Virus record (IMG/VR): IMGVR_UViG_3300042308_001616
Span: 62,001 to 126,000 of that record
Strand: one strand, 5' to 3'
DNA length: 64,000 nucleotides
Shown: positions 7,496-63,845 of the stretch, piece after piece
Layout: each line of letters opens with the position of its first letter
Numbering within the stretch: position 1 is the stretch's first letter
The notes under the pieces: model-generated
The model's database searches: none
The model's input: only the letters and a program-made list of their open reading frames with translations
Told to the model about the DNA's origin: nothing
Program-made: the position numbers and the translations under genes

Positions 7496-8269
7496 CTATT
7501 TTCTTACCTTTACACTTACGCCTGTTTTAGAAGTATTCTTTCTCACTTTCTGGTTTTTACCTTCGTTTATATTGACGGTTACCTTTTTAGACGCCTTCAC
7601 AACGAATTTGTCTTCCCATGGTGTGAATAGTGTTCCATCCGCATTTACTTCGAGACGTATATTACCCTTAGCACCCTCGTTTAGTATACTCAGTTTCTTC
7701 ATTGGTATTACACACTGTCCGTTTTTGATTTCACCGACAAACATAAGTGTCCACTCATCACTCTCAACTATAAGTCTAACCTCTGTGTCAGATTGGTTCA
7801 CACCCTCTACTGCGATATCACATCGGAAGTCTTCTGCTTTGTCTTTGTATAATTTATAATATTCATCAGTTTCGTTACTTTCGTTGTGACCGAAATCGAA
7901 GTGATTATCTTTTTCATAATCTTCTTCACTTTCACCAGTAGCAAGTCCGTTCATATACACAGAGAACTGATTTATATACTCAGTTGTGTCCTTAGTATTA
8001 TTGTATGTTTCTGATTTCTCAAAATCTTCAATGTTATTCATCACTGCATCGCCGTATGAATCTCTCATAGAATCCGCAACTGCATCGTAATCCACACCAT
8101 CAACGTTATTATTAACGATATAAGGATTCAATGAATGATCAATATGCTCGTCATCGTCTTCACTCTCTGACTCATTTATAATACCTTCTTTTATAAGGTT
8201 AGACTTCATTTTTGTCAATTTTTCAACATCTATAAAGTCTTCAAATCTGAATATGTCTTTTTCTTCCAT
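7496..8269 (-). CDS. Hypothetical acidic, probably virion-associated protein
   Basis: 257 aa; N-terminal IFRFEDF motif and IKE/INE sites; beta-rich C-terminal domain; TATATA upstream. Confidence 0.7.
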   Translation of the reverse strand: MEEKDIFRFEDFIDVEKLTKMKSNLIKEGIINESESEDDDEHIDHSLNPYIVNNNVDGVDYDAVADSMRDSYGDAVMNNIEDFEKSETYNNTKDTTEYINQFSVYMNGLATGESEEDYEKDNHFDFGHNESNETDEYYKLYKDKAEDFRCDIAVEGVNQSDTEVRLIVESDEWTLMFVGEIKNGQCVIPMKKLSILNEGAKGNIRLEVNADGTLFTPWEDKFVVKASKKVTVNINEGKNQKVRKNTSKTGVSVKVRK

Positions 8270-8285
8270 AATTTATATATTTTTT

Positions 8286-8675: not shown

Positions 8676-8742
8676 GTTTATTCTTTTTTGTCTTATATAT
8701 TATTAAAACGTGGTTGGACTCATGATAGTTAATATATAAAAC

Positions 8743-12324: not shown

Positions 12325-12371
12325 GGTGTTAGTCCATTTTAATATATACCCAAAAGAAAAAGGTAAACCTT

Positions 12372-20151: not shown

Positions 20152-20153
20152 AA

Positions 20154-20585: not shown

Positions 20586-20591
20586 TAAGAA

Positions 20592-22534: not shown

Positions 22535-22561
22535 CGGTTTCCGGTTTTTATATATAGTCCT

Positions 22562-23350
22562 ATGAGACTTAAGAAATACCTAGAGTTTGTACAGGACGAT
22601 TTTGAGCCAATAAAATCTTTCCATCTGAAAGATGAGCTTTGCCCAGATATATGGGAAGGTGAAGAATTGGACGATCATGTAAGGAAGACACTAATGAGAA
22701 TAGGACAGGACTTCTATAAAGAAACCGAGATAAAAGCCGGTCTTGTTGATGTCGTACTTTGTGGTTCGTTATGTAACTACAACTGGTCGGAAAAATATTC
22801 AGACTACGACCTACACATAATAGTTCATCTAAATGAAGTAGATGAAAATCCAGAAATTGCAGAAAAAATTTGCGACCTGAGTAAGAAAATTTGGAACCTA
22901 AAACATGACATAAAGGTTGCAGGATACGAGGTCGAAGTTGCTATACAGGACGAGGAAGATTTGAAGTCTAGTATACTTGCAGGAAGAATGGGTGGAGTTT
23001 TTTCACTAACACAGGGACAATGGATTAAAAAACCGGAAAGAAAAGAGTTCGTTCCTGATGAAAAACTAATCAGATCCAAAGCTGAAACTGTGATGGCTAT
23101 GATAGATGAGTTAGAGGATAGTATTGATAGTGAACCATATGATATATTCATAACTAGGCTCGATAAGGCATGGAAAAAGATTAAAGAATTAAGACAATCT
23201 GGATTAGATAGTGAAGGTGGTGAGTTTTCTATAGGAAACCTAGTATTCAAACTTCTTAGAAGAAATGGATATAGCGGTAAAGTGATGAGACTCAGAAGAG
23301 AGGCGTATGACAGACAGTTTGAGAAAAAAACATACCGATATGAAAATTAG
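22562..23350 (+). CDS. Pol-beta-family nucleotidyltransferase with CTS-like N-terminus
   Basis: GSLCNYNWSEKYSDYDLHI (GS...DxD) and a third acidic residue region VEVAIQD; begins MRLKKYLEF. Confidence 0.75.
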   Translation: MRLKKYLEFVQDDFEPIKSFHLKDELCPDIWEGEELDDHVRKTLMRIGQDFYKETEIKAGLVDVVLCGSLCNYNWSEKYSDYDLHIIVHLNEVDENPEIAEKICDLSKKIWNLKHDIKVAGYEVEVAIQDEEDLKSSILAGRMGGVFSLTQGQWIKKPERKEFVPDEKLIRSKAETVMAMIDELEDSIDSEPYDIFITRLDKAWKKIKELRQSGLDSEGGEFSIGNLVFKLLRRNGYSGKVMRLRREAYDRQFEKKTYRYEN

Positions 23351-24041
23351 TATTTCTGAGATAGAGGAGGTATTCAAAGATGTCTTCCAGGAAGAGGAAG
23401 GATTGGTTAAATCGATAGAAACTATATACGAGAAACCACAAAAGGAAAATGCAGAATTCCTGAAACTCGTAATATCAATACATGGACTATCAACGACAGA
23501 CACCAATATCATACACACTAAATTTCTCTTCAAAACTGACTTAGAAAAAAGAGATATTGTAGAGAAAGAGTTTATCTACCTTTACGACATAAACTGTGTA
23601 TATCACAAAGTGCAGTTTGATAATACTATCGACCTAAAAGAGAAGATAGAAGGAATTATAGAATCCAATAACTTCGGTGAGGACATAATAATACTCTCCG
23701 ACTTCATTGAGGCACCTGCGATGTTTTTGAACTACTATATGAAAAGAGCGAAAATAGAAGACTATTCAATATTTGATGTAGAGTATGAGCCTAAGTTCAA
23801 AACAACTCCATGTGATAAGACTACATTCGACTTCAAAATAAACATAAACAATAACTACAACATAGATATGTCTATCTACAAAGTAGACAGAGAAAATGAT
23901 GAAGATGTAGACCACTACAAATTCCAGTTCAGATTTATGGATGATATCGAGACTTACGAAACTGAAGACCTCAAAAATATACACTATTTCATAGGATCCA
24001 AAATTGCCAAAACATTAGATAAAAAACTTAAGAACAAATGA
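23340..24041 (+). CDS. Hypothetical protein
   Basis: Start moved to ATG 23340 (MKISISEIEEVF), overlapping the upstream stop. Confidence 0.7.
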   Translation: MKISISEIEEVFKDVFQEEEGLVKSIETIYEKPQKENAEFLKLVISIHGLSTTDTNIIHTKFLFKTDLEKRDIVEKEFIYLYDINCVYHKVQFDNTIDLKEKIEGIIESNNFGEDIIILSDFIEAPAMFLNYYMKRAKIEDYSIFDVEYEPKFKTTPCDKTTFDFKININNNYNIDMSIYKVDRENDEDVDHYKFQFRFMDDIETYETEDLKNIHYFIGSKIAKTLDKKLKNK

Positions 24042-24520
24042 GAATAATTAAATTGTTCGAAGAGTTTACCTATAATGATGTTGGTGCTGCGATAGTTTAC
24101 CACGGTACACCAGACGAACACGATTTTAACAAAAGAGGATATTTAGCAAACGGAACTTTCTTCTCTACAAGTTCTAACGAAGCTAGTTCGTATGGAAAAC
24201 ATATCTATAAGATTGAACTCAAAAAAGATTTGAATATACTCGATACAAACAAAATTGAAGATTGTCAGAAGATAATTGACGAATTTGGACCATTAGAAGA
24301 TCCTTATTACAATACAGACGAACCCGAATACTTAGTTAACACGGCAGAGGAACTTTGGCACCATAGTGATAGTTGGTCACCAATTGAAGCAGATGAACAA
24401 CTTATGTCTTGGCTAAATGGAAATTATGATGGTGTTTGGGTCTACGAAGGTGGTACCAGAAATTTACTAATATTCAAACCAGTAGAAGAAAAGATTGATA
24501 AAACCTTTAAAGTGAAATAA
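24038..24520 (+). CDS. ADP-ribosyltransferase-fold-like protein with CTS-like N-terminus
   Basis: IVYHGT...GTFFSTSSNEASSYG...YDGV pattern; begins MRIIKLFEEF. Confidence 0.5.
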   Translation: MRIIKLFEEFTYNDVGAAIVYHGTPDEHDFNKRGYLANGTFFSTSSNEASSYGKHIYKIELKKDLNILDTNKIEDCQKIIDEFGPLEDPYYNTDEPEYLVNTAEELWHHSDSWSPIEADEQLMSWLNGNYDGVWVYEGGTRNLLIFKPVEEKIDKTFKVK

Positions 24521-24533
24521 TAATATATACGAG

Positions 24534-25232
24534 ATGAAACTTCATAAATTCTACGAATTCATAAAAGAGGCTGCAGAGTGGGACCAATCCGCAATAGACG
24601 AGATGCTTCTACCAATCAAGGACCTCGGCTTTGAAGTACAGATATCAGAACCAAATCCAGTAACGGATCAGTCGTCACATCTCTACAAAAAGATGGTTCG
24701 CGAAATAACAATATGGATCAAAAACCAGTACGAGGATAAACTAAATTCCGACGTAAATACTTTCATATTCAAAGACAATGGACAATGGGATAGAATCTAC
24801 ACAAACGACACCAAAGTGTTTGATTTGATGATTGAGTTTGGAAACCTCGGCCACAGATTGAGTGAGGACGGTACAGCGATGAATATAGTATGGCATGACT
24901 CCGCAATGAAACTAAAACTATTACACGTGGTAGACGACACAACGTCCACAGACAAAGAGATTGAACTGAAAAACGTATTCGTCGAACTAAGGAACAAATT
25001 CATAAGAACCAACACGGACTTTGTAAGAGGTATGCTATGGGAACCTCGTGCAGTAGAGGATGTTACAGATAGTTTCTCTATAAGATGTAGTGGTACTTTA
25101 GGTGCTTTCACAAATAGAAAATGGTCTGCTTTCGTAAAAGGTATCGACCTATCGAACTTCAAAGTAACGTTCGAGAAGGACGAGGAGGACGAAGATGTGG
25201 TGACCGTGCATATATCATTACAGAAAGACTAA
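24534..25232 (+). CDS. Hypothetical protein with CTS-like N-terminus
   Basis: Begins MKLHKFYEFIKE; TAATATATA upstream. Confidence 0.7.
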   Translation: MKLHKFYEFIKEAAEWDQSAIDEMLLPIKDLGFEVQISEPNPVTDQSSHLYKKMVREITIWIKNQYEDKLNSDVNTFIFKDNGQWDRIYTNDTKVFDLMIEFGNLGHRLSEDGTAMNIVWHDSAMKLKLLHVVDDTTSTDKEIELKNVFVELRNKFIRTNTDFVRGMLWEPRAVEDVTDSFSIRCSGTLGAFTNRKWSAFVKGIDLSNFKVTFEKDEEDEDVVTVHISLQKD

Positions 25233-29547: not shown

Positions 29548-29787
29548 CTAATTCGTTGTTTCAAACTCGAAGACAAAATCTCTTCCTTCGGACCACCAAA
29601 TACAGTCACCTACGTTGGCAATTGCCTCAAAGAAATTTATTAGGTCGTCTATTAAAATATTACCTGGTGTGAAGAAAAGTCTTTCTACTTTTCCTACTTT
29701 GTCTATTCTACACTCAAACTCTGCGGCAATTGACTCGAGTGTTTGATTTTCATTACTTTCATAGAACGTTTTGTATTTCTTTATCAT
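29548..29787 (-). CDS. Small protein with CTS-like N-terminus
   Basis: Begins MIKKYKTFYES. Confidence 0.7.
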   Translation of the reverse strand: MIKKYKTFYESNENQTLESIAAEFECRIDKVGKVERLFFTPGNILIDDLINFFEAIANVGDCIWWSEGRDFVFEFETTN

Positions 29788-30800
29788 AATCCAACAATAA
29801 TATATCCGTTTTCAACATTAACCGTGTCGATGTCGGTGAGTATATCTTTAAGTTTGTTGATTTCCCTTATTGTATCAGGAATAGGCCATCCCTCCACATC
29901 AAAATATACATCGAAAGTATTATTCAACTGGTAGCCTGCATAAGAACGTAATCTCTTCATTCGGTCGAGTACTTTTTTATGTTTTGCGGCCACTACTTCT
30001 TCTACATCTTCATCTTTAGATATAATTCGTGATGTAGGTAAAGACTCCCAATCAACATTTGTACTAGCACGGCAAAGTCTATCGAGATAAGATATGTTTT
30101 GTCTTTCCTTTCCTGTGTGTTCGTCGAAATAACCTACAGATACATTAGTACATTCTGGTATATCATTCATAAGCATTGCAGAGTCAGTAAATATACCTGT
30201 GGAATCTGGAGACATTTTAAGTCCGTTTTTACCGAACTCCGCACAAAGTGTCTTCGCAAATTCACTACTACAACAATTTCTACCTAATTGGTGTGTTATA
30301 ATTGAGTGGTAATTTCTACGGTCAAAAGAAACACATCTTTTTATTCCTATAAGTTGTTCTTCGTTTGCGAAATCCATCGCAAGTGCTTTGGAACCAATTC
30401 CACCTCTTTCTTCACCGATAAAGAAGTAATATAATCCAGGAACATTGTTGGCCATCATATAAAGCATAACGGTAACACCTGCTTTATCGTCTGCGCCTAA
30501 TATTGTCTTTCCATCGGTACATATAAACTCATCTTCACCCTCTGTATAAGTAAACCTAACGGTATCATTCTGTCTGTGATCAACGGTATCGAGGTGTGAT
30601 GTAAACATAGTTGATGATCCACCACCTACTACTTTATAATAGTTGCCGTGAGCATCTTGGTCTAATTCTGGTAGATATTTAAGTACCTCTTCTTCGTTTC
30701 CGTGTGGGTATGTTTTTGATGTGAGTGAAAGAAATGTGTTTTTTGGGTCTTTCGGGTCCATCTTACCCTCTTTGAAGTCTATTTTTTTCTTATCCATCAT
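29784..30800 (-). CDS. M28/M20-like zinc peptidase
   Basis: TSHLDTV, LGADDKAGV, GEERGGIGS, SFDRR, NVSVGYFDEH metal ligands. Confidence 0.85.
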   Translation of the reverse strand: MMDKKKIDFKEGKMDPKDPKNTFLSLTSKTYPHGNEEEVLKYLPELDQDAHGNYYKVVGGGSSTMFTSHLDTVDHRQNDTVRFTYTEGEDEFICTDGKTILGADDKAGVTVMLYMMANNVPGLYYFFIGEERGGIGSKALAMDFANEEQLIGIKRCVSFDRRNYHSIITHQLGRNCCSSEFAKTLCAEFGKNGLKMSPDSTGIFTDSAMLMNDIPECTNVSVGYFDEHTGKERQNISYLDRLCRASTNVDWESLPTSRIISKDEDVEEVVAAKHKKVLDRMKRLRSYAGYQLNNTFDVYFDVEGWPIPDTIREINKLKDILTDIDTVNVENGYIIVGL

Positions 30801-31294
30801 ACTATTCTTACGTTACCTACTGTGAAAATAACATATTTTCTGTTTATATCGTCAATTATTATTTTATTTTCTCTGACTTTACTAAATTCTTTATTACAAT
30901 AGACCATTTTAGTGGTCTCTTCGTTCTTACAAAATTTAAGCTTTAGTAGTTTGGCGGCTTGTATAACAACTTCATCCGGTATTATATTATCACCATTTGT
31001 CTTTATTATTAGACTTCTTTCCTCACCACCTTCCAATGTTTTCTCTGTACAAATTAGAATATCATTTACACTTGGTGCGTATCCTCCGAGGTCTAACGCG
31101 AACTTTCCGGAGTATAGTTTTGTCATCTTTATACAGGTTTCTGGATCTTCGGACCACCATATATTATAATTTTGTCCGGTGTTGTCGTATATAAGACGGT
31201 GTTTCAGGCTACCATCAAACCGCTTTATATCACTTTTCATTGTGCTTTTCGTTGTGGCTTCTGATAAGAAATCTAAAAAACTATTTATTCTCAT
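30797..31294 (-). CDS. Hypothetical protein with CTS-like N-terminus
   Basis: Start moved to MRINSFLDFLSE, downstream of a TATATA motif. Confidence 0.7.
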   Translation of the reverse strand: MRINSFLDFLSEATTKSTMKSDIKRFDGSLKHRLIYDNTGQNYNIWWSEDPETCIKMTKLYSGKFALDLGGYAPSVNDILICTEKTLEGGEERSLIIKTNGDNIIPDEVVIQAAKLLKLKFCKNEETTKMVYCNKEFSKVRENKIIIDDINRKYVIFTVGNVRIV

Positions 31295-31351
31295 AGTGTA
31301 TATATTGTATATGAAAAACAAATATTTGAAAACACACTCAAATATAATTTA

Positions 31352-33481: not shown

Positions 33482-33595
33482 AAAGTATATATAAAGTAAC
33501 ATTTACTCCTTTACTCTTATAAATATATATAATTTTTGTTTTTAGTATATCAATTTTTTGTTCAGAAAACCTGACAGTGTGAAAATTTTATTAAC

Positions 33596-33644: not shown

Positions 33645-35357
33645 TTAGTTAAGGAATTGATTCTCATCAGTAACGTTAATAGTCATAAATTGTTTGTGTG
33701 GGAACCATCCAACCTCGGCAACTGCATACCTAGATCTTAGTAACATTCTTGGTGCAAAAGTTGCTTCAGAAATAACTGAGATAGATTGAGCCATTAAGTA
33801 AGGAACGAAGATGATACCTGGTTGATCAGGGTTATTCTTTCTACCTAAAACGATTCTGTTGTCATTATATCTCATGTATGGATCAACATAGATAGCGATA
33901 TCTCCGATTGAACCTACAGGGTATAATTGACCTTGTCCGTTTAATTTAGACTTCAATGGGTTAATTGTATAACCAGCGATGTCTTGAAGAGCTGCAGCAA
34001 GACCCCCGTTTGTGATAAGGTATTGAGCAGGACCTACACGACCCTCAGTTGCGATGAAGTTAGATGCGTGAGCAATCTTAGTAATCAATTTTCTTTGAAC
34101 TGCGTGAGTAGTTTCACCACCAATATTAGCAGAAGCAGCATAAGTAGTATCTAAATCGAAGATTGTCATACCAGCTGTGTATCCAGCAACGTTAGTGTTA
34201 GCAGCAGGAGCAGAAGCTCTGTTTAATTGTCCCATTTCGAAAATCTTAGCAACGATTTGCTTAGAAATTGTTTGTGACAATTCGTTAACAAGGATAGATT
34301 CCATTTTTTGAACGATATCCATACCTGTGTTAGCTTTGATATCTTCAATCTCAGTTCTTCTAAGTGCAGAAGATACTTCGATAGTACCAACTTGGATAGT
34401 CTTAGATGAAATCTTAGGTCCGATAACACCAGCATAAGAATCATCATCGATATCCCTGTTCATTGGATAATCACCAGACTGAACGTTAGCTGTCCAGTTT
34501 GCAGAGAAACCTGGGATGTGATCTTCTAATGTAGATACTAACTCGATAGTAGGTGTAGCAGTAACAGCTTGAGTACCAATGTTCTTGATTTGCGAAGCCA
34601 TAGACTGAGTAGGGTTGAAAGAGTTTCTAGTTGCGTCGAAAGACCATGCAGTCAAAGCAGAACCAACTGCAGTGTGAGCAGTGTTTGCTTGTCTCCAAGC
34701 TCTGAACATTGGGTAACCATCTACTCTTGAGAATCCTAAGAATTCAAGAACTCCTACTTTACTAGCAGATTCTGCTGGAGCTGTAGTTACGAGTGGGTTA
34801 GAAGAACCGAAACCATTTACGAATAATCTACCACCTTGAAGACCACCTGTAGTATTTGTTGTTCCTGCGGCAAAACCAGCTTCTAATGCAGTTTTGATAT
34901 CAGCTTGGTTAGCTGGAGTTGTAGCCTTAAGTTTGAAAACTTGTGGTCTCTCATCACCAGAACCTAATCTTGTGTCATCATATTGGAAATCGATGTAAAG
35001 TAAATCGATTTTCGGACCTGGAGTTGGTTTAACAGCAACAAGGTCAAGACCAATAGTTTGAGCAGCAATTTTCATAGCTACTGGTAAAAGGTTTTGTCCT
35101 ACGTCTCCAGAACCTGCTACGTTACCAAGTGCATTTGAGTAGTTACCTGGGTTACCCGCAAATGAACCAACTGTAGCATTTGAAACTGGACCCATACCTG
35201 CTACGTTAGAAGCATTTACGTATGCGTTTTCGTTGATTGAGTGAAACTCAGCGTATTCCGCCATCCATTCTACTCTATCACCAATGACACCCATATTCTC
35301 GAGAACTGGTGCCCATTTTTTAGTGGCTTTCGCCTTGTCTATCCTAATGTGTGACAT
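33645..35357 (-). CDS. gp23: Major capsid protein, T4 gp23-like
   Basis: KKWAPVLE, GLDLVAVKP, IYVDPY, IIFVPYLMA, PRMLLRSRYA; downstream of the protease gene. Confidence 0.9.
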   Translation of the reverse strand: MSHIRIDKAKATKKWAPVLENMGVIGDRVEWMAEYAEFHSINENAYVNASNVAGMGPVSNATVGSFAGNPGNYSNALGNVAGSGDVGQNLLPVAMKIAAQTIGLDLVAVKPTPGPKIDLLYIDFQYDDTRLGSGDERPQVFKLKATTPANQADIKTALEAGFAAGTTNTTGGLQGGRLFVNGFGSSNPLVTTAPAESASKVGVLEFLGFSRVDGYPMFRAWRQANTAHTAVGSALTAWSFDATRNSFNPTQSMASQIKNIGTQAVTATPTIELVSTLEDHIPGFSANWTANVQSGDYPMNRDIDDDSYAGVIGPKISSKTIQVGTIEVSSALRRTEIEDIKANTGMDIVQKMESILVNELSQTISKQIVAKIFEMGQLNRASAPAANTNVAGYTAGMTIFDLDTTYAASANIGGETTHAVQRKLITKIAHASNFIATEGRVGPAQYLITNGGLAAALQDIAGYTINPLKSKLNGQGQLYPVGSIGDIAIYVDPYMRYNDNRIVLGRKNNPDQPGIIFVPYLMAQSISVISEATFAPRMLLRSRYAVAEVGWFPHKQFMTINVTDENQFLN

Positions 35358-40472: not shown

Positions 40473-42206
40473 TTAGAATTCGAATTCGGCACCACCTTGA
40501 GCACCACCCTGTGCTGGAGGAGCTTGAGCACCACCCTGTGCCGGAGGAGCCTGAGCACCACCTTGTGCCGGAGGAGTTTGAGCACCACCTTGAGCACCAC
40601 CCATATCACCACCTTGAGCACCACCCATATCACCACCGCCACCACCTTGAGCACCACCTTCACCCGGGACTCCGGAACCGATAGTTGTTGCATCTTTGGT
40701 CCAATATCTTGCATTCTCTGCTTTCTCTTCTGGTGTAAGTTTGAATATGTGGTCCATTATATACTCTATGTGGAAATATGGTTTCTCACCATTCATAACA
40801 CCAAGCATTGTTCCTACAATACCTGCTTTCTTCTCTAGGTTACCCAACTTTTTCCACTCTTCAAAGACCTGATTAGAGTAAAAGACTATGTCCATTTGGT
40901 TCATAAACCTATCATCTTCAATCAATTCTGGAAATTCGATGAGCATCTGCATCTTTAGTGGTTTAACAATTATCTCTTTGAAGTTAGATCTAAGTCTACC
41001 TATGAAGTTGTGAAACTTAATCTCATCTCTCGTCATCTCAGAAGCCTCGGTTACTAAGTTACCACCACCACTTTCACCTTCGAAACGGTTTAGTGGAATC
41101 TTACTTGCACGTTTCAATGCCTGGTGAAACCATTTTAGCATTCCGTCTTCGTTTAGGTCGTGTCCCTGTGGTGACTTCAACTCCATTGAAGGAGAACCCG
41201 CATCACCTTCTGGAAACCAAATCTGTTTGTTGAAAGGAAGATGTTTAGAGCCATTGATTGTGAGTGTACCTAAAGTGTCATCCCACTCAACTTCCTCAGA
41301 GTAATCGTGTATCAGTTGACCTATCTGTTCTTCGGCTCTCTGTCTGGAAAGACCTTTAATAGGAATTTTAAACTCCTGATAAAGTGTTGCATTGATAATG
41401 TTGAACATTATCTTAGTCTGTTCAAGAATTTTGAGCTGGTTGTATGGTCTTATGAGTCCTTCTACGTATGATGTCTCAGAATAGTCATTCTGTGTAGAGA
41501 ATGATATAAAAACAATCTGTGAGTCTAGGAATATTCTTCTAAGTTGTGGATCTTCCGGATATTGTATCCAGAGGTGTCCTACGTTTGGTTCGTATGCAGG
41601 AAGTATCGTCTCTGGACGTAATCTATTGAATGCTACTATGTTTTTCTTTTTGTCGTCATATACAAGCTCTATGGCTACATATCCATCTACGAGGAAATCC
41701 TTCATCATATTAAAGGCGGTTATACTATCTGAAAATCCATATTTGTTGTATATTGATTCGAAGTATTCTTGATACTTATCATGTATTTCTTTGTTATAAT
41801 CCGAACTTAGTGGTCTTGGTGAACAGAAATCACGATCATCGTTATAAACAATACATTCATCTGCAACTTGACTCACAAAGTCTCTTATCTCATCTTTTAT
41901 AGAGTATTCTCTTAGAATTCTTCGTTTATCTGGATAAGACCTATCGAGATATGGTACAGACTTCCTGTTCAAAACCGATGCCACTGCCCTGGATGAGAAA
42001 AAATCATACATCGAATTTCCTTTAGAAGCATATGGATCCTCATTGATTCCTATACCAACCTGGTTACGTATGATCATATCATCATAGTTCATTCCATGGT
42101 TAGAAAGGTTTCTAAGTATCCTATTAAAGAAGCCCTTATTTTCTCCTGAGTTTTGTATAGAACCCAGATTCTGTTCATTGTTGTTAAAATAATTATAAGA
42201 GGCCAT
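40473..42206 (-). CDS. gp20: Portal protein, T4 gp20-like
   Basis: FLVDGY, LRPE, YVEGLIRPYNQL, WFPEG..G, ALKRASKIPLNR, TRDEIKFHNFIGRLR; C-terminal GGAQAPPAQ repeats. Confidence 0.88.
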   Translation of the reverse strand: MASYNYFNNNEQNLGSIQNSGENKGFFNRILRNLSNHGMNYDDMIIRNQVGIGINEDPYASKGNSMYDFFSSRAVASVLNRKSVPYLDRSYPDKRRILREYSIKDEIRDFVSQVADECIVYNDDRDFCSPRPLSSDYNKEIHDKYQEYFESIYNKYGFSDSITAFNMMKDFLVDGYVAIELVYDDKKKNIVAFNRLRPETILPAYEPNVGHLWIQYPEDPQLRRIFLDSQIVFISFSTQNDYSETSYVEGLIRPYNQLKILEQTKIMFNIINATLYQEFKIPIKGLSRQRAEEQIGQLIHDYSEEVEWDDTLGTLTINGSKHLPFNKQIWFPEGDAGSPSMELKSPQGHDLNEDGMLKWFHQALKRASKIPLNRFEGESGGGNLVTEASEMTRDEIKFHNFIGRLRSNFKEIIVKPLKMQMLIEFPELIEDDRFMNQMDIVFYSNQVFEEWKKLGNLEKKAGIVGTMLGVMNGEKPYFHIEYIMDHIFKLTPEEKAENARYWTKDATTIGSGVPGEGGAQGGGGGDMGGAQGGDMGGAQGGAQTPPAQGGAQAPPAQGGAQAPPAQGGAQGGAEFEF

Positions 42207-46905: not shown

Positions 46906-46969
46906 GTGTTTCGAAATTTTTTTTGTTTTCTTTGGGTATATATTATTCGCAAAAAGCCATTTTTTTCCA

Positions 46970-49552: not shown

Positions 49553-50200
49553 TTATTTTATTGGACAATGTGTCGCAGAGTATATGAACTTATCATTTCT
49601 ATTTAGACGAACACCCATAACCTTTGCAGCCACCTCAACATCATCGAGACACTCACGATCTGCACCACCAACGAGTATAACCTCATTTATCGACATACTC
49701 TCATTCGTCGATTGTGCCTGATTTATCTCATCAAATAAATCATATAACTTTTTAGGCAAATGGTACCAAATATGATTATTACCAATATAAATTATCAATG
49801 TTCCTTCTTTAGTTGGAAAACTATCTCCCTTTACAAGAGAACCTTCTTCTTCTTTAGACTTTATTTCATCATATACTGAGTTGTCAAGTATCTTACGATA
49901 AAAATCTACATCTACATCATAATTATATCTCTTCTCTATTAGGTCATTTTGATTTGGAAAATGGTAGAGATCATCATTCGTAGGCATATCGGGATCCTCA
50001 TCATATAGATAGTCTTTATCCACATTCTTACCATCGACATGATTGTCCCATATTTGGTATACACTACCAAAATTTCTACAATAATCCTTCAATTGACTTA
50101 CATAATTTTCTGTAAAGAATTTCGAAAATGACTTTTGTACGTCTACTATTATAAGAACGTCTTTTGAAAAGTGTGATTCGAATGTCTTAAGATACCTCAT
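49553..50200 (-). CDS. Isochorismatase / nicotinamidase-like cysteine hydrolase with CTS-like N-terminus
   Basis: IIVDVQ (Asp), IEKRY (Lys), VGGADRECL (Cys) triad; begins MRYLKTFES. Confidence 0.65.
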   Translation of the reverse strand: MRYLKTFESHFSKDVLIIVDVQKSFSKFFTENYVSQLKDYCRNFGSVYQIWDNHVDGKNVDKDYLYDEDPDMPTNDDLYHFPNQNDLIEKRYNYDVDVDFYRKILDNSVYDEIKSKEEEGSLVKGDSFPTKEGTLIIYIGNNHIWYHLPKKLYDLFDEINQAQSTNESMSINEVILVGGADRECLDDVEVAAKVMGVRLNRNDKFIYSATHCPIK

Positions 50201-50203
50201 AGT

Positions 50204-51214
50204 TTATTTCTTTTTTCTAAGTAATGGGTTTATATTCTTTACATATCCCTTTCTCGCAGAAGGCAAGAAACCTATCATAGTAAGAAAGGTGCCTTCCCTC
50301 AGAATGTCGATTATCTCCTTTGGACGCCATTCACTACCCCATAACCCAAGTCTCTCATCAAACTCCTTACAGATGGATTTTATATAGTCTGAATTATCTT
50401 TATTCCTATCAATCGGAAGTGAAAGTGATATACAAAACTCAACATCATCCGGTACGTCTTTGATAAGATTCACATAAACGTCCGGCGCATAGAAGGTATC
50501 AACATTCCAGACAAGTTTACCCAAACCTACTTGTGTATAACTACGTGATTTTAACATTTGTGCGTTAAACTTAATTACGTGGTGTCTATTATTTTTGTAG
50601 ATTATAGAGAACTCAATCTCAAAGTCATGTTCATCGAAACCCTCGAGTGTCGCAGTCACGATGTCTCTGAACTCATAAGGATCGATGTTCCATTTATCCA
50701 TCACAAACGTGGCAGGGTCAGGAAGTGAAGACTCATTCATTCCGTATTTTTTTCGGTAATAATTTTGATAAATCTCAGTATCACCACTATATCTCAACGA
50801 GAAGAAAATATTTTCTGATAGTTCTATCACACCGGAGGAATGATAAGGAATACCAGAGTCAGATATGAAATTATTTAAATCTTTTACGAAACCATCGTAG
50901 TCATTTGGCATTTCGACCCAGAACTCGATGTTCGGCTCTATACTACTATGTCCACTTTCACCATTCTCAATCAATGCCGACAAATTGTGCCAATACGGAC
51001 CTTCTTTGAATTTTACACCGTTATATTCAAATACCCTACAAGTTTCACCATTCTGCCTAATATAGAATACTATCTCGAACTCATGCGAGTCGTATGTCAG
51101 TGCTAGTGAGTCAATCATATCCTTCAATAAGTTGAAGTCTACCTCCCAGTATTGTTCTATAATATCCGTCGGATTGAAACCAGTGACCGACTCAAAAGTC
51201 TTTAAATACCTCAT
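50204..51214 (-). CDS. Hypothetical protein with CTS-like N-terminus and internal duplication
   Basis: Start moved to MRYLKTFESV after TAATATATA; two similar segments (P...I...W.VD...HEFEIVFYI / P...V...WNID...HDFEIEFSI). Confidence 0.7.
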   Translation of the reverse strand: MRYLKTFESVTGFNPTDIIEQYWEVDFNLLKDMIDSLALTYDSHEFEIVFYIRQNGETCRVFEYNGVKFKEGPYWHNLSALIENGESGHSSIEPNIEFWVEMPNDYDGFVKDLNNFISDSGIPYHSSGVIELSENIFFSLRYSGDTEIYQNYYRKKYGMNESSLPDPATFVMDKWNIDPYEFRDIVTATLEGFDEHDFEIEFSIIYKNNRHHVIKFNAQMLKSRSYTQVGLGKLVWNVDTFYAPDVYVNLIKDVPDDVEFCISLSLPIDRNKDNSDYIKSICKEFDERLGLWGSEWRPKEIIDILREGTFLTMIGFLPSARKGYVKNINPLLRKKK

Positions 51215-51232
51215 ATCGTTATATATTAAAAC

Positions 51233-51260
51233 AAAAAACCCGTCTTTGAGACGGGTTTTT
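51233..51260. terminator. Terminator
   Basis: AAAAACCCGTC-tttga-GACGGGTTTTT. Confidence 0.8.
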
Positions 51261-51274: not shown

Positions 51275-51910
51275 TTATAAAGGTAATTCTTCTTCACCTT
51301 CTTCGTTTTCTTCTTCGTTTTCTTCTTCGTTTTCTTCTTCACCCTCTTGTGCTTGACCTTGTGGTTGAACTTGAGTTTGAACTTGAGTTTGGGCTGGTTG
51401 TGCTTGTGCAGGTTGTCCTTGTGCATTAGGCTCTTCAAACTCTCCACCTTCAGGTACTTGTGCTTGACCTTCTGGTTGAACTTGAGTTTGAACCGGTTCT
51501 TGTGCTTGTGTAGGTTGTGCCTTAACCTGTGCTTGGCCTTCAGATCCTTCTTCAGTAGATGCAGGAGTTTGTGCTTGTGCAGGTTGTCCCTGTGCCTGTG
51601 CTTGACCCATTAATGCACCACCTGGTATTTTATCTAAATCCAGACCTGTTGTAGTGATGTATTGTAAAAGTTGCTCAGCAATCTCTACATCTCCAAAAAA
51701 CTGGCGAAGATTCTTACCGGTTGTGTCCTTTACTTTCTTAACGTAAGAGTTTATCAATGATTGTGGAATGTCCACCATAGACCTTACCTTATAAACGTCA
51801 CCTACCTGCAAAACGGATTCTTTAATCGCCTCATCGAAAGCAGAAGGATCAACTGAAGAAAACTTACTCTTAATGTTTCTGTAAGAGTCATACGTTCTGA
51901 TGTGTTTCAT
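51275..51910 (-). CDS. Hypothetical protein with CTS-like N-terminus and Q/A/P and Glu-rich tail
   Basis: Begins MKHIRTYDSY; low-complexity C-half. Confidence 0.7.
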   Translation of the reverse strand: MKHIRTYDSYRNIKSKFSSVDPSAFDEAIKESVLQVGDVYKVRSMVDIPQSLINSYVKKVKDTTGKNLRQFFGDVEIAEQLLQYITTTGLDLDKIPGGALMGQAQAQGQPAQAQTPASTEEGSEGQAQVKAQPTQAQEPVQTQVQPEGQAQVPEGGEFEEPNAQGQPAQAQPAQTQVQTQVQPQGQAQEGEEENEEENEEENEEGEEELPL

Positions 51911-51972
51911 TTGTTTAATATTTTTTTATAGGTTATATATTATTCCGGAAAACCGCCTTTTATCCTTTTCTT

Positions 51973-54686: not shown

Positions 54687-54924
54687 TGTGTATATAGAAA
54701 AGGGATAACGACTATGTCGACTACGAAGTAATCGGTGCCGGAAACCTACGTATAAGTAATTCATGCACCTGGCAGTGTGGTGGAAAAAAAGGGTTCAGTA
54801 TCGGAGCAGAATGGGCAAACACGGTTACGCAGGAGGTGTAATTTCGAACGAGGACGCAATCAAACTAGCGAGACATATACTTAGGACTGTAAATTTAGGT
54901 GAACTGATACCGGACGAAGATTAG
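54686..54924 (+). pseudogene. Disrupted small gene (premature TAG plus 1-nt deletion)
   Basis: ATG TGT ATA TAG AAA... continues KRDNDYVDYEVIGAGNLRISNSCTWQCGGKKGFSIGAEW, then a shifted frame gives KHGYAGGVISNEDAIKLARHIL...DED-TAG; span 239 nt (3n-1). Confidence 0.5.
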
Positions 54925-57078: not shown

Positions 57079-57098
57079 TTTCCTTATATATAAGGAAA
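57079..57098. promoter_or_regulatory. 20-bp perfect palindrome containing the late-promoter motif
   Basis: TTTCCTTATATATAAGGAAA between divergent TerL and candidate TerS. Confidence 0.65.
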
Positions 57099-60358: not shown

Positions 60359-60432
60359 TTTCTTTTTTTACGAAAATAAGGAAAAATCCGAGAACGAACA
60401 ATTTATATATATGCAAAACGCAATAAAATTTC

Positions 60433-63285
60433 ATGAAATATCTGGCGAAAAGAGAAGACTTCCTAAGAAGTGCGAAAAAGCTAAGTCAAAAATCTGACTT
60501 TATAAAGGAAAGCAAAGGTGATTGGAGACTCATAACAGAAGAAGCTCCATTCGAAAATGATATACCGTGGGCAGAATCACTTATCGGAAGGTTTATCTAC
60601 CATCAGATAATACAGAGGATTGAAGATGGAACCAGACTACTTAGAATCTTACCTTTGACAAGAAGACTAAGATCCGAGTTTGACAACCTGGTATCGGAAG
60701 GTTACTTACTAAACGTAGATGATGATAAGAAAGCATTGATGGGTAAGCTAACACTACATGCGGTTTTTGAAGCTCTCATAATACATGTTGATAAAGGTGC
60801 AAAAGTAGAAGTACTTAAAAACCTAACAGATGAGGCACAAGAAACGGTGAAGAAAATGCCAGATGAAGAAAAGGAAAAATCCACTCTAAAATCAGAATTA
60901 GACGAATTCGCTAAGTTTCTCGAAGGATTTAAAAACAACGAGGGTGATGGTATGGACGAAGAGGAAGAAGATGGAGAGGAAGAAGATGGAGAGGAAGAAG
61001 ATGGAGAGGAAGAAGAGGAAATTAAAGATAATAAAGAAATTAGTGAACTAATATTACAAAATATGAAGGCACTAAGAGGAATATTGGAAGCATTTCCTAG
61101 TTTCAAAAGTGAAGTATCCAGACTAGCAACAACAACAACCGGAAAACATCAAATATCCGCAGGAGACACAATACAGAAATTAAGTGCAGAATATCAAATA
61201 AAACCAGAAGTACTTATAGGAATGAATACTTGGTTACAGGGTAGAAAACCAACAGATTCTCTACCTACCAAAGACAAAAATGGTAAACCTTTAACCATTT
61301 TATTAGAAAGTGTAGTAAACGAGAGTAGTGTTAGTGCATTTGTGGGTAAGGTTGTTGCCAAAATACAAAACCTATTGAAAAACAAAGGTGGGAACAAAGA
61401 TGAAATACAAACAAAAGTACACGACTCACTTAAATCTTTAGTAAGACATATAGATGACTTACAAAATCCTAAAATAAAAGAGGTTTCTGTAAATCTCGCA
61501 CTTATGAATACACTAATCTCCGGAAAATATCCAGAGAAAGTAAATACAATATATGACGAGATAAAGGAATATGTGACAGGAAAGAAAAAAGGTGAAGTAT
61601 CACTAACACAGAACGACCTTCTAAAGGAAGATAATGACCTTAACTTCGGAGTAGATAAAGATGGTAAAAAAATGACTCCACAAAATCTGGAGGCAAATAA
61701 AGGTAAAATACTAGACAAAGACTCTTCACAGTTGATTGAAATAGATGGTAAGAATGTTTACGTAACTAATATAGCTTTCAAAATAGCAAGGTTCTTCAAA
61801 TTCATCATTCAGTTTGAGAAGGCAGGTCTTATAGATGTATTGGATACGTTACAGGCCAATACGGAGTTGTTTATCAAAACCGGTCGTCAAATTACCGGAA
61901 TGGTAAACGAAAAGAGACTGCTCGGATTTGATGGATTTATGAGAATTTACGAAGCGGATGAACAAAAACCGGAAGAAGACAAAGGAGCACCGACTGAGGA
62001 GCAAGGAACAACATCTGAAAGAATAAAGGACTTTTTTGAACAGAAATGTAAAACGGTAAAATCTTATGTTCTTGAGAAGACAGAGGTTGAAAAAATTGTA
62101 GCAAACTTCGAGAGTATCGAAAAGGAAGGAAAAGGTTTGGTAATAAACGGAATTGATCCTATAATGCAGATATGTAGACTTTTCAACCGTGCATACAAGC
62201 TCTATATGAGAGAGAAGATATCACAAAGACAGGGTGGTGAAATTGGTGCAACAATCGCAGGAAGATATACATCATATGGTGGTGATAAGAGTGGACCTTT
62301 CAGAATAAACAAAGTTTTTAACCAATGGGAGGACGCAGTACTCAAAATTATGGGTGATAGAAAATATGAGTATATTTTTAGTAAAAATACCAAAATGAGG
62401 TTTCCACTAGTACCAGATCCGAAAAATGAAGAAGATTGGGAGATTAGGAAAGGTGCTGGTCTAGCACTTAATAATTTTATGAATGAATTAATCGACGGTG
62501 ATAGTCTTTATAAAACCAGTTCTACGGATAGAGGTGCTCAAGCAAAATTTATTGAAAAATATTTTGGTAAAGTTGGTGAAGCTGACTTAGAAAAGTCGGG
62601 AGGTCTTACAATAGGTGATGATGGTGAAAGTAACACCAAAATTGCAACAGCGGTAGAAAATGGCTCGGTAAAGTTATCATTTACTAAGTTGAATGAGAAA
62701 CCGAATTTCAAAGCCAATACATTTTTTGCCATAAAGTACAAAAACATAAAAGAAGGAAAAATAGAAGGTGACTCTAAATACTACTACGTATGGACTTTAA
62801 CAGATGCAAAATCTATTGCATTTAGTGGAACATTCAAATATTTTGATGAATTGATACAATCTAGTCCATTAAGTGATCCAGAAAGTGAAATTGTTGATTC
62901 CAGAAAGAAGGTAATAGACAAAGGAGCTCTACCGAAAATTACGAAGGACACAATTTATAGCAAAGTTGATGGTACTACAGACCATTGGCAGACAAATTAT
63001 GCTAGAACAACAAAGGATTTAGGAGATTTATTTCTAAGAGGTTCAAAATTGAATATAAAATATATCGACGGAAGAGACAAAAGGAAAACGTATGATAAGT
63101 CTATATTCGTGGAAGACATATATTCAATAAACACCGTTTCGGATAAACCAGAACAATTTGTACCTAAGATAACAACAGAATGGTTAAAGAAACAAAAAAT
63201 TGCATCATCCAGTGATAAAAGTCCATTCTCTAAAGATCCATCACAACATCTAACCGAAAGAAACACAGACATAACCAAAGTATGA
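60433..63285 (+). CDS. Large probable virion protein with CTS-like N-terminus and one LysM domain
   Basis: HQISAGDTIQKLSAEYQIKPEVLIGMN (LysM, about 61141-61290); acidic linker; begins MKYLAKREDF. Confidence 0.7.
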   Translation: MKYLAKREDFLRSAKKLSQKSDFIKESKGDWRLITEEAPFENDIPWAESLIGRFIYHQIIQRIEDGTRLLRILPLTRRLRSEFDNLVSEGYLLNVDDDKKALMGKLTLHAVFEALIIHVDKGAKVEVLKNLTDEAQETVKKMPDEEKEKSTLKSELDEFAKFLEGFKNNEGDGMDEEEEDGEEEDGEEEDGEEEEEIKDNKEISELILQNMKALRGILEAFPSFKSEVSRLATTTTGKHQISAGDTIQKLSAEYQIKPEVLIGMNTWLQGRKPTDSLPTKDKNGKPLTILLESVVNESSVSAFVGKVVAKIQNLLKNKGGNKDEIQTKVHDSLKSLVRHIDDLQNPKIKEVSVNLALMNTLISGKYPEKVNTIYDEIKEYVTGKKKGEVSLTQNDLLKEDNDLNFGVDKDGKKMTPQNLEANKGKILDKDSSQLIEIDGKNVYVTNIAFKIARFFKFIIQFEKAGLIDVLDTLQANTELFIKTGRQITGMVNEKRLLGFDGFMRIYEADEQKPEEDKGAPTEEQGTTSERIKDFFEQKCKTVKSYVLEKTEVEKIVANFESIEKEGKGLVINGIDPIMQICRLFNRAYKLYMREKISQRQGGEIGATIAGRYTSYGGDKSGPFRINKVFNQWEDAVLKIMGDRKYEYIFSKNTKMRFPLVPDPKNEEDWEIRKGAGLALNNFMNELIDGDSLYKTSSTDRGAQAKFIEKYFGKVGEADLEKSGGLTIGDDGESNTKIATAVENGSVKLSFTKLNEKPNFKANTFFAIKYKNIKEGKIEGDSKYYYVWTLTDAKSIAFSGTFKYFDELIQSSPLSDPESEIVDSRKKVIDKGALPKITKDTIYSKVDGTTDHWQTNYARTTKDLGDLFLRGSKLNIKYIDGRDKRKTYDKSIFVEDIYSINTVSDKPEQFVPKITTEWLKKQKIASSSDKSPFSKDPSQHLTERNTDITKV

Positions 63286-63845
63286 GAATAATAAGATATA
63301 GTGAGTTTAGTGAGAAGTTGAGTTTAAATTCTGCAGACTCCCCAGCACTCAAAATGGACAAACAATCCATAAATAAAACCGAAGAACATATCAAGGATTA
63401 CGATTCTAAAAAAAACACTATCACTTCGTTATATACACAGATTGGGAAAGATAATAAGTTTCTTTATAGTGATGAGATGATTAAAGATAAAGTTGAAGAG
63501 ATAATGGGTGCAGAAGATGATGAAAATAGAAATCCATATCTACAGAAGCTAATAACGGTATTGGATCTGGAGAGAAAACTTGTCGGTGATACAAAGTCTC
63601 AAAGTGACGACAAACTTGCTTCGGAAAATTTAAGACAAGAACTATCCAATGAAAAGGATGATGCTAGAAAAGGAGAGATTCAGAAAAAAATGGATGACTT
63701 AAATAAACGACTCAGTGAGTATGACATCACAAATCTAACAAAACAGGTAGAAGAGTCGAGGAAAAAATTCTTCGACGATATGAATAAGTTAACACAAGAT
63801 TACAAAACGGCCGTAAATAAGATAAAGACGACCAAACAAAAATAG
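63282..63845 (+). CDS. Coiled-coil protein with CTS-like N-terminus
   Basis: Begins MRIIRYSEFSE; heptad-rich. Confidence 0.7.
   Translation: MRIIRYSEFSEKLSLNSADSPALKMDKQSINKTEEHIKDYDSKKNTITSLYTQIGKDNKFLYSDEMIKDKVEEIMGAEDDENRNPYLQKLITVLDLERKLVGDTKSQSDDKLASENLRQELSNEKDDARKGEIQKKMDDLNKRLSEYDITNLTKQVEESRKKFFDDMNKLTQDYKTAVNKIKTTKQK

What the first reader, a model, noticed from the sequence alone, without database searches (positions are those of the whole stretch)
7496..63845. Shared N-terminal motif resembling the T4 capsid-targeting sequence on about 11 unrelated proteins
Seen: MRLKKYLEF (22562), MRIIKLFEEF (24038), MKLHKFYEFIKE (24534), MIKKYKTFYES (29787), MRINSFLDFLSE (31294), MRYLKTFES (both 50200 and 51214), MKHIRTYDSY (51910), MKYLAKREDF (60433), MRIIRYSEFSE (63282) and IFRFEDF (8269): basic residues, then aromatic-x-[ED]-aromatic, often followed by an xxE site. 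Established: T4 internal proteins carry MKTYQEFIAE, which targets them into the prohead and is cut after Glu by gp21. Inference: this phage packages and injects a large cargo set, including enzymes (NTase, ART-like, cysteine hydrolase), through a portable address tag.
Basis: partly seen in the sequence, partly recalled or inferred. Interest (0 to 1): 0.78.

Follow-up and report, generated by a model that had tools for sequence, protein, structure and literature searches.

The report
Shared N-terminal tag on phage proteins
About a tenth of the genes of this giant bacterial virus and its relatives begin with the same ten-amino-acid tag. The tag most likely loads those proteins into the virus head, as a known tag does in phage T4, so that they are injected together with the DNA.

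Summary
Eight of the eleven listed N-termini match a tag model trained only on a sister genome. Two more are lineage variants, and one (7496-8269) is not supported.

The window comes from a Mahaphage-clade huge phage with a T4-type head. In the 642-kb relative LR756502, 128 of 972 ORFs (13%) start with M-K-[HY]-[LI]-[KR]-x-[YF]-(N-E-S / E-S-F / K-I-F-E-S), against about 0.2 expected. These ORFs fall into 96 BLAST families. Synonymous codons vary, so selection acts on the peptide.

The tag is common in viral metagenome contigs of this clade and at chance level in 596 Gb of cellular genomes.

Three new results favour the capsid-targeting reading:
- 92% of tagged genes lie in units headed by a WATATATA element. 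That element precedes 11 of 11 structural genes and 1 of 12 replication or metabolic genes.
- The tag ends in hydrophobic-N-E-[SN]. This motif is invariant in the capsid protein's N-terminal region and 7-17 times enriched in the gp21-type protease-scaffold protein.
- Tagged proteins are mostly orphans or effector-like. Housekeeping enzymes are untagged.

Packaging itself is not shown. The number of tagged proteins and their acidity are unlike T4.

The parts
22562..23350 (+). Tagged protein (MRLKKYLEF...), 262 aa, NTP_transf_2-like nucleotidyltransferase. The tag is codons 1-9.
   Evidence: HMM 7.0 bits. Orthologues keep the tag (MKLERFYEF, MKLSKYFEF). phrog_36119. Atlas score 0.97 to PF01909 clusters. 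TATATATA at 22549-22556, 5 nt before the ATG.
24038..24520 (+). Tagged protein (MRIIKLFEEF...), 160 aa, ART-PolyVal/AcrIF11-like ADP-ribosyltransferase candidate.
   Evidence: HMM 10.8 bits and PSSM 19.1. PF18760 E=1.5e-5 over residues 19-148, below the gathering score. Atlas score 0.94. Operon-internal in the unit that starts at 22562.
24534..25232 (+). Tagged protein (MKLHKFYEFIKE...), 232 aa, member of the expanded 'D-L-x-D-D-G-F' family. Its EFIKE resembles T4's EFIAE.
   Evidence: HMM 8.4 bits. In 13 orthologues F6, Y7, I10 and E12 are invariant. In the AF2 model the tag is helix 2-9 with pLDDT<50, detached from the fold. AATATATA at 24522-24529, 4 nt before the ATG.
29548..29787 (-). Tagged small protein (MIKKYKTFYES...), 79 aa, variant register of the tag.
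   Evidence: Low HMM score of 2.4 bits, but it matches the MIKKF[KR][IL]FE consensus of LR756501. It lies 3' of the tagged gene 30797-31294 in the same orientation.
30797..31294 (-). Weak tag variant (MRINSFLDFLSE...), 165 aa, just downstream of the capsid gene block.
   Evidence: HMM only 2.5 bits. AATATATA at 31299-31306, 4 nt before the ATG at 31294, supports that start.
49553..50200 (-). Tagged protein (MRYLKTFES...), 215 aa, isochorismatase-like (cysteine-hydrolase fold) lead. The tag and a short linker precede the conserved LIIVDVQKSF strand.
   Evidence: HMM 20.0 bits. Orthologues vary within the tag consensus (MKYIKTFESY, MRHLKIYEDF, MKHIKLYESF) while the domain stays conserved. Atlas lead.
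50204..51214 (-). Tagged protein (MRYLKTFES...), 336 aa, unknown function.
   Evidence: HMM 15.4 bits. Same 9-mer as 49553-50200 but with 6 synonymous differences. A hairpin terminator and AATATATA at 51220-51227 lie 5 nt before the ATG.
51275..51910 (-). Tagged protein (MKHIRTYDSY...), 211 aa, unknown function.
   Evidence: HMM 17.9 bits. Orthologues have MKHIRTFENY and MKHIRKFESY. AATATATA at 51934-51941.
60433..63285 (+). Large tagged protein (MKYLAKREDF...), 950 aa. Variant tag with Arg at the aromatic position.
   Evidence: HMM 10.0 bits. Orthologues have MKYLIKRNDF and MRYLKQREEF. No Pfam or PHROG match. TATATATA at 60404-60411.
63282..63845 (+). Tagged protein (MRIIRYSEFSE...), 187 aa.
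   Evidence: HMM 8.7 bits. The orthologue in LR756502 starts MKYLKGYSSFNE. Its start overlaps the stop of 60433-63285.
35444..37543 (-). Prohead protease (gp21/S77 type, about residues 1-170) fused to a coiled-coil scaffold-like region. Presumed receptor and processing enzyme for the tag.
   Evidence: phrog_207 E=1.3e-30. The clade profile hits T4 gp21 structure 5JBL at E=1.9e-7, and invariant H73 and S128 sit at the catalytic positions. LNES167, VNEN272 and LNES627 are three copies where 0.2-0.4 are expected.
33645..35357 (-). Major capsid protein, T4 gp23 type, with a candidate maturation site I-N-E|N at residues 41-44.
   Evidence: PF07068 E=9e-27. INEN is conserved in 62 of 62 IMG/VR orthologues, and the Glu is invariant out to PTm1 and Lak.
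40473..42206 (-). Portal protein, T4 gp20 type.
   Evidence: PF07230 E=1.9e-57.
7496..8269 (-).
   Evidence: HMM 4.3 bits, at residues 8-15 and not at the terminus. Orthologues have MEEKDDIFRFEDF and MKDDVFTFDDF and lack the basic M-K/R start.

Best explanation
The peptide is a portable N-terminal address tag of 9-12 residues. It is predicted to form an amphipathic helix (M, basic, [HY], [LI], basic, x, aromatic, then an acidic end) and is followed by a polar, acidic linker.

Proposed mechanism, with the status of each step:
1. Tagged genes are transcribed late, from the same WATATATA promoter class as the structural genes. This is inferred from promoter statistics.
2. The tag docks the new protein onto the scaffolding core, which is built by the gp21-type protease-scaffold fusion, before the gp23-type shell closes. 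This is inferred by analogy with the T4 capsid targeting sequence.
3. The prohead protease removes the tag at its C-terminal hydrophobic-x-Glu|Ser/Asn site. This is inferred from the same motif being invariant in the capsid protein's N-terminal region and strongly enriched in the scaffold.
4. The mature proteins stay in the head and enter the next host with the DNA. They include a nucleotidyltransferase, an ADP-ribosyltransferase-like enzyme, an isochorismatase-like hydrolase and many small acidic orphans. This step is inferred.

Shown directly: the tag exists, it is selected at the peptide level, it sits on many unrelated proteins, it is specific to this virus clade, and it is tied to late-type transcription units.
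For: Scale and significance:
- LR756502 has 128 of 972 ORFs tagged, against 0.24 expected.
- 632 similar N-terminal pairs are found, against 0 in internal controls.
- 181 of 1806 ORFs are tagged in 80 head-module loci of IMG/VR.

Peptide-level selection: synonymous codon use in the tag is near genome-wide frequencies.

Portability: the tagged proteins form 96 BLAST families, 87 of them singletons. They include distinct folds (NTase, ART, isochorismatase-like, lysozyme, Rnl1). In the AF2 model the tag is a separate low-confidence helix.

A phage-encoded partner is implied: only 9 hits in 596 Gb of cellular genomes, about the chance number, against at least 120 in IMG/VR.

T4-type head machinery is present with catalytic His and Ser.

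Late expression:
- The motif precedes 11 of 11 structural genes and 1 of 12 early or metabolic genes.
- 116 of 126 tagged genes lie in units headed by the motif, against 285 of 795 untagged genes (odds ratio 21, P=8e-35).

Cleavage-like end of the tag:
- Hydrophobic-N-E-[SN] occurs 3-5 times per protease-scaffold protein where 0.2-0.4 are expected, in five lineages.
- INEN is invariant in the capsid protein.
- The residue after the tag's first Glu is Ser in 50 of 122 tags.

Cargo type:
- The NTase and ART domains are typical of polyvalent proteins, which are predicted to be packaged and injected. T4 Alt is a packaged ART (PMC5512222).
- 50 tagged proteins hit 7 Pfam families. 50 length-matched untagged proteins hit 43, including ClpP, tRNA synthetase, RecA and GrpE.
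Against: - There are no proteomic, structural or genetic data. Packaging, cleavage and injection are all inferred.
- More than 120 tagged species in one genome is far beyond any known head cargo set.
- 79% of tagged proteins are net acidic, whereas T4 internal proteins are highly basic (PMC8442874).
- A few tagged proteins are unlikely cargo: 7 of 128 have TM-like segments and one matches PQ-loop. An Rnl1-like ligase and an HNH endonuclease are also tagged.
- In many tags the Glu sits at hydrophobic-Glu (F-E-S) and not at hydrophobic-x-Glu.
- PTm1 and Lak-A1 have homologous head genes, and PTm1 also shows the same site enrichment in its protease-scaffold protein, yet neither has a shared tag.
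- Similarity to the T4 decapeptide is too short to prove homology.
- The promoter motif is palindromic, so divergent gene pairs can be mis-assigned.
Confidence: 0.55

Rival explanations
1. The tag is a handle or degron for a phage-encoded proteolysis or chaperone system, for example the phage's own ClpP. It would set the lifetime of a class of late accessory proteins that are never packaged.
For: LR756502 encodes an untagged Clp protease and GrpE. The Met-basic-hydrophobic start loosely recalls N-terminal ClpX recognition motifs (own knowledge). The tag is absent from cellular genomes, so the reader of the tag is phage-encoded.
Against: This does not explain the match between the tag's end and the motif enriched in the scaffold and capsid protein. 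It also does not explain why effector-like enzymes would be made late only to be degraded.
Confidence: 0.12
2. The tag targets proteins to the virion, but to an external or tail-associated structure (fibres, decoration, baseplate) and not to the capsid interior.
For: Late co-expression fits this equally well. The window encodes giant collagen-like fibre proteins. The 950-aa tagged protein's orthologue lies beside the sheath gene in LR756502.
Against: More than 100 different small acidic proteins are hard to place on an external lattice. The protease-site-like end points to the prohead interior, where the protease acts.
Confidence: 0.1
3. The peptide optimises translation start or early elongation of near-leaderless late mRNAs in a host without Shine-Dalgarno pairing. 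It is not a sorting signal.
For: In tagged genes the promoter motif usually ends 0-10 nt before the ATG. AAA is favoured at codon 2.
Against: - Tags occur equally on operon-internal genes whose starts overlap the previous stop (24038, 49553, 63282).
- 47 untagged genes have the same short leader.
- The most highly expressed structural genes lack the tag.
- Conservation is at amino-acid level and includes aromatic and acidic positions.
- PTm1, from the same host phylum and with the same AT-richness, has none.
Confidence: 0.06
4. The shared N-terminus only reflects common descent of one large paralogous family, or base composition and chance.
For: One family of about 46 members accounts for roughly a third of the tagged proteins in LR756502.
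Against: About 90 tagged proteins lie outside that family and have different folds. The chance expectation is below 1 per genome.
Confidence: 0.03

Closest known systems
T4 capsid targeting sequence (CTS, MKTYQEFIAE) of internal proteins IPI-III, and the short propeptides of Alt and gp24
   Same: An N-terminal tag of about 10 residues on otherwise unrelated proteins. It starts M-K, has an aromatic-x-[ED]-aromatic core (T4 Y-Q-E-F; window Y-L-E-F, F-E-E-F, F-Y-E-F), and ends at hydrophobic-x-Glu. The phage has gp21-type protease, gp23 and gp20 homologues. One cargo candidate is an ADP-ribosyltransferase, like Alt.
   Different: There are 10 or so tagged genes in 64 kb and more than 120 in a sister genome, against a handful in T4. 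The cargo is mostly acidic, not basic. The consensus differs and drifts between lineages (MKHLKxYNES, MIKKFKIFE). Packaging is untested.
Long N-terminal propeptides of ejection and inner-body proteins of phiKZ-like giant phages (SPN3US, 201phi2-1), cut at [SAG]-x-E
   Same: Giant phages that load many proteins into the head, with removal of a propeptide after Glu by a gp21-related protease (PMC5694885).
   Different: Those propeptides are 80-160 residues long, have no shared sequence motif, and occur on about 8-20 proteins.
Polyvalent proteins of phages and conjugative elements (Iyer et al. 2017)
   Same: The same effector domain families (ART-PolyVal, NTP_transf_2, NADAR), predicted to be delivered with the DNA (PMC5512222).
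   Different: There the domains are fused into one giant polypeptide. Here they are separate small proteins, each with its own tag.
Cargo-loading peptides of encapsulins and encapsulation peptides of bacterial microcompartments (own knowledge)
   Same: Short amphipathic helices joined by a linker, which direct unrelated enzymes into a protein shell.
   Different: Those peptides are not cleaved, the shells are not virions, and there is no sequence relationship.

Membership tests
T4-type capsid targeting sequence | Short (10-20 aa) peptide at the extreme N-terminus of otherwise unrelated proteins | tested here: met
   The tag is 9-12 residues, and the tagged proteins form 96 BLAST families in LR756502.
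T4-type capsid targeting sequence | The peptide ends in the prohead protease's site (hydrophobic-x-Glu|small residue) | tested here: met
   At sequence level only. Tags end in [YF]-N-E-[SN], I-F-E-S or F-E-S. The same motif is invariant in the capsid protein and 7-17 times enriched in the protease-scaffold protein.
T4-type capsid targeting sequence | The phage has a gp21-type protease, a scaffolding core, a gp23 shell and a gp20 portal | tested here: met
T4-type capsid targeting sequence | Tagged proteins are present in mature heads with the tag removed | not testable with these tools
   Needs virion mass spectrometry. No cultured relative carries the tag.
T4-type capsid targeting sequence | The tag is sufficient to encapsidate a foreign protein | not testable with these tools
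   Needs an experiment.
T4-type capsid targeting sequence | Sequence homology to MKTYQEFIAE | tested here: inconclusive
   Shared features are the M-K start, the aromatic-x-E-F core, and EFIxE in 24534-25232 (PMC8442874). The peptide is too short for statistics.
T4-type capsid targeting sequence | Cargo consists of small, highly basic DNA-associated internal proteins | tested here: not met
   79% of tagged proteins are net acidic.
Peptidase S77 (T4 gp21 prohead protease), for 35444-37543 | Profile match, with catalytic His and Ser conserved | tested here: met
   phrog_207 E=1.3e-30. 5JBL hit at E=1.9e-7, with invariant H73 and S128 aligned to the catalytic positions. PF03420 itself scores only 18.6 bits, below its cut-off of 27.
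Sec/lipoprotein signal peptide | Hydrophobic core of 7-15 residues after a basic N-region | tested here: not met
   Positions 8-22 are acidic and polar. TM-like segments occur in 7 of 128 tagged proteins.
ART-PolyVal (PF18760), for 24038-24520 | Pfam score above the gathering threshold | tested here: inconclusive
   26.3 bits against a cut-off of 31.2, E=1.5e-5. The Atlas neighbours are ART-PolyVal/AcrIF11 clusters at 0.94. Catalytic residues were not checked.
Single paralogous protein family | Similarity extends beyond the tag | tested here: not met
   True for one family of about 46 members, but not for the other 90 or so proteins, nor among the window's ten.

The most novel reading that the evidence does not exclude
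A single address tag marks more than 100 unrelated, late-expressed proteins (10-14% of the proteome) of a widespread clade of huge Bacteroidota phages for loading into the head and co-injection. That would be by far the largest pre-loaded effector set known. Individual virions could possibly carry different samples of it. The tag would also be a ready-made label for finding new anti-defence and host-takeover proteins in metagenomes.
Probability: 0.4. Interest if true: 0.9.

Novelty: new variant of a known kind. Interest (0 to 1): 0.8.

Why it matters
If the tag is a capsid-loading signal, reading ten residues would list the injected proteins of an uncultured clade of the largest known phages. 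That list would hold hundreds of candidate counter-defence and takeover effectors. It would also show that the T4 targeting principle can scale to over 100 cargo species, and it would offer a second, natural tag for packaging foreign proteins into phage heads.

If the tag is not a capsid signal, a virus-specific decapeptide on 13% of a proteome would still be an unexplained sorting or regulatory system. I found no mention of it in the searched literature.

Tried and rejected
- Chance or composition: rejected.
- An RNA- or DNA-level motif or recombination cassette: rejected, because synonymous sites vary.
- A general habit of AT-rich Bacteroidota phages: rejected. PTm1 has 0 tags in 150 kb and Lak-A1 has 0 of 38 ORFs.
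- A host-cell signal: rejected, because hits in cellular genomes are at chance level.
- A possible PTm1-specific tag (KLY..ISEN on two proteins): gave no excess of similar N-termini.
- Literature searches for the tag strings and for Mahaphage packaging found nothing relevant. The PTm1 virion paper is not in the library.
- Homologues of the isochorismatase-like protein in deposited phages are only in Mahaphage genomes.
- The weakly tagged ORFs near the capsid gene of LR756504, LR756501 and LR756500 have no homologues in the window.
- The AF2 model of 24534-25232 is only moderate (pLDDT 67), so I did not run a fold search on it.
- Not done: catalytic-residue check of the ART, and a whole-genome census of LR756501 and LR756504.

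Full report
**What the window is.** The GC content is about 35% and genes lack Shine-Dalgarno sequences. Annotated genes include:
- a T4 gp23-type major capsid protein (33645-35357, PF07068 E=9e-27)
- a gp20-type portal (40473-42206)
- a T4-type large terminase (54921-57065)
- a gp15-like protein
- a clamp loader
- two collagen-like giants (8743-19673)
- glycosyltransferases, a D12 methylase, NADAR, RNase II/R and homing endonucleases.

The capsid protein is 73% identical to that of LR756502, a 642-kb uncultured phage. It is 53% identical to those of the 636- and 735-kb genomes, 29% to Lak phages and 28.5% to Tenacibaculum phage PTm1. These are the Mahaphage clade, predicted to infect Bacteroidetes (PMC7162821). 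An IMG/VR contig of 248.8 kb carries an identical capsid gene.

**The observation.**
- A regex version of the pattern hits 8 of 72 N-termini, against 0.19% of internal positions.
- I fetched 638 kb of LR756502. There, 73 ORFs match the regex, and a PSSM built from them finds 128 of 972 ORFs at a threshold where 0.24 are expected.
- The consensus is M-K-[HY]-[LI]-[KR]-x-[YF], followed by N-E-S, E-S-F or K-I-F-E-S, and then a polar, acidic linker.
- An HMM trained only on those tags scores eight window N-termini at 7-20 bits. The best internal hit in a credible gene is 3.3 bits.
- 29548-29787 fits the variant MIKKF[KR][IL]FE used by LR756501. 30797-31294 is weak. 7496-8269 is not a member.

**Level of selection and portability.**
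- Identical peptides differ at synonymous sites, and codon use within the tag is close to genome-wide use. The peptide is therefore what is conserved.
- Without the first 15 residues, the 128 proteins form 96 BLAST families, 87 of them singletons.
- One family with a D-L-x-D-D-G-F motif has about 46 members. It includes window gene 24534-25232.
- Orthologues keep the tag while changing residues within its consensus.
- The window's tagged proteins are unrelated to each other.
- AlphaFold models the tag of 24534-25232 as a short helix (residues 2-9) with pLDDT below 50, separate from the fold.

**Distribution.**
In these, 276 of 1590 ORFs are tagged. 112 of the 120 stretches share homologues with LR756502 or the window.
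- At least nine of those contigs also carry the clade's capsid gene.
- The same pattern finds 9 sites in 596 Gb of cellular genomes, where about 4 are expected by chance.
- PTm1 (150 kb examined) has no excess of similar N-termini: 1 pair against 1 in the control. The first 230 ORFs of LR756502 give 632 against 0.
- I found no mention of the tag strings in the literature.

**The head machinery.**
- Residues 1-268 of 35444-37543 match head maturation protease phrog_207 at E=1.3e-30.
- A profile of six clade orthologues hits the T4 gp21 structure 5JBL at E=1.9e-7. Invariant His73 and Ser128 fall at the catalytic positions.
- The remaining 430 or so residues resemble coiled coils. PTm1's orthologue is annotated as scaffold plus protease.

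**A candidate cleavage motif.**
- The capsid protein's N-terminal region carries W-M-[AS]-E-Y-A-E-x-H-x-[ILM]-[NHY]-E-[ND]. The Glu is invariant from the window to PTm1 and Lak, and the site reads I-N-E-N in 62 of 62 IMG/VR orthologues.
- Hydrophobic-N-E-[SN] occurs at 2.6e-4 per position in the LR756502 proteome outside N-termini.
- In protease-scaffold proteins of the window, LR756504, LR756501 and PTm1 it occurs 3-5 times, where 0.2-0.4 are expected from each protein's own composition. In 79 IMG/VR orthologues it occurs 2-6 times.
- One copy (L-N-E-S167) sits at the junction between the protease domain and the coiled coil.
- T4 gp21 cuts scaffold, capsid protein and CTS after hydrophobic-x-Glu (PMC5694885). 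The tags end in [YF]-N-E-[SN], I-F-E-S or F-E-S, and Ser follows the first Glu in 50 of 122.
- That the protease cuts here is an inference.

**Timing.**
- The element WATATATA lies upstream of 11 of 11 LR756502 homologues of structural genes: head completion, two neck proteins, terminase, sheath, baseplate, portal, protease, capsid, gp15-like and collagen-like.
- It lies upstream of 1 of 12 replication or metabolic genes.
- 56% of tagged genes carry it within 60 nt, against 22% of untagged genes.
- 92% of tagged genes lie in a unit headed by it, against 36% of untagged genes (odds ratio 21, P=8e-35). Random 60-nt windows carry it 3% of the time.
- In the window, most tagged genes lie in such a unit, often with the motif 4-5 nt before the ATG. 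No exact motif was found within 80 nt upstream of 29548-29787.
- Effector-like enzymes made together with structural proteins is the pattern of T4 Alt, which is packaged and injected (PMC5512222).

**What is tagged.**
- In the window: an NTP_transf_2-like nucleotidyltransferase, an ART-PolyVal/AcrIF11-like protein and an isochorismatase-like protein. The rest have no family.
- None of about 12 recognisable non-virion enzymes, and none of six structural proteins, is tagged.
- In LR756502, 50 tagged proteins hit only 7 Pfam families (lysozyme, Rnl1-like ligase, HNH, PQ-loop, DUF6576).
- 50 length-matched untagged proteins hit 43 families, including ClpP, NAD synthase, a tRNA synthetase, GrpE and RecA.

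**Weighing.** The tag behaves like a T4 capsid targeting sequence in position, length, general chemistry, a protease-site-like end, the presence of the T4-type head machinery, late expression and cargo type. Against this:
- nothing shows packaging
- the tagged set is unprecedented in size
- the proteins are mostly acidic (79%), unlike T4's basic internal proteins
- a few members have membrane segments
- relatives with homologous head genes (PTm1, Lak-A1) have no shared tag, even though PTm1's protease-scaffold protein shows the same site enrichment.

I put the capsid-loading model at 0.55. The rivals are a phage-specific degron (0.12), docking to an external virion structure (0.10), translational optimisation (0.06) and paralogy or chance (0.03).

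Noticed in passing
window 8731-8738, 22549-22556, 24522-24529, 31299-31306, 51220-51227; also 35393-35400, 37572-37579, 57085-57092: A palindromic WATATATA element behaves as the late promoter, analogous to T4's TATAAATA. For many genes it ends only 4-5 nt before the ATG, which implies leaderless or nearly leaderless late mRNAs.
   Followed up: partly
window 8743-12324 and 12372-19673: Two giant collagen-repeat proteins (1193 aa and about 2430 aa) lie in a stretch of raised GC (44-45% against 35%). They are probably head or tail fibres. The start of the second is uncertain (TTG at 12372 or ATG at 12699).
   Followed up: no
window 19717-21452: Three tandem paralogues start MA[NGD]xLTFT.. (144, 143 and 286 aa) directly after the collagen-like genes. 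They have no family match.
   Followed up: no
window 31352-33502, 37692-38081, 38038-39972, 43226-43753: The head module is interrupted by mobile or foreign genes: a DUF7487 homing endonuclease beside the capsid gene, a short ORF with only the DUF7487 N-terminus, a complete RNase II/R between protease and portal, and a TnsA-like endonuclease.
   Followed up: no
window 24534-25232; LR756502, e.g. L003:10332-15566 and L011:26540-29860: A large lineage-specific family of small acidic proteins has a D-[IL]-L-x-[DE]-L-x-D-D-G-[FY] motif at about residues 25-45. It has about 46 members in LR756502, often in tandem arrays, and nearly all are tagged. There is no Pfam or PHROG match.
   Followed up: partly
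window 24038-24520, 27104-27589, 49553-50200: NAD- and ADP-ribose-related genes occur together: an ART-like protein (tagged), NADAR (untagged) and an isochorismatase/nicotinamidase-like protein (tagged). LR756502 also has NAD synthase and a NAMPT homologue.
   Followed up: no
window 45622-47118 and 46970-47938 (minus strand): Two long ORFs on the same strand overlap by about 150 nt. The start of the 498-aa ORF is probably mis-called. It has no family match, although it sits beside the gp15-like gene.
   Followed up: no
L002:33829-34518 (-) and L002:49212-49433 (+) (PTm1): Two PTm1 proteins begin [MK/MR]KLY..ISEN[FL], ending in I-S-E-N. This resembles the inferred protease site, so PTm1 may have a small tag set of its own. 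Only this pair was seen.
   Followed up: partly
L151:38685-40373 (LR756501): A tandem array of four small proteins starts MI[KR]K[FY][KR][IL]FE and is followed by a shared DPYGEE.W motif. This is a lineage-specific variant of the tag on another expanded family.
   Followed up: no
window 51228-51260 (minus strand): A GC-rich hairpin with a T-run (AAACCCGTCT...AGACGGGTTTTTT) lies immediately upstream of the promoter of 50204-51214. This is a compact terminator-promoter-ATG unit.
   Followed up: no
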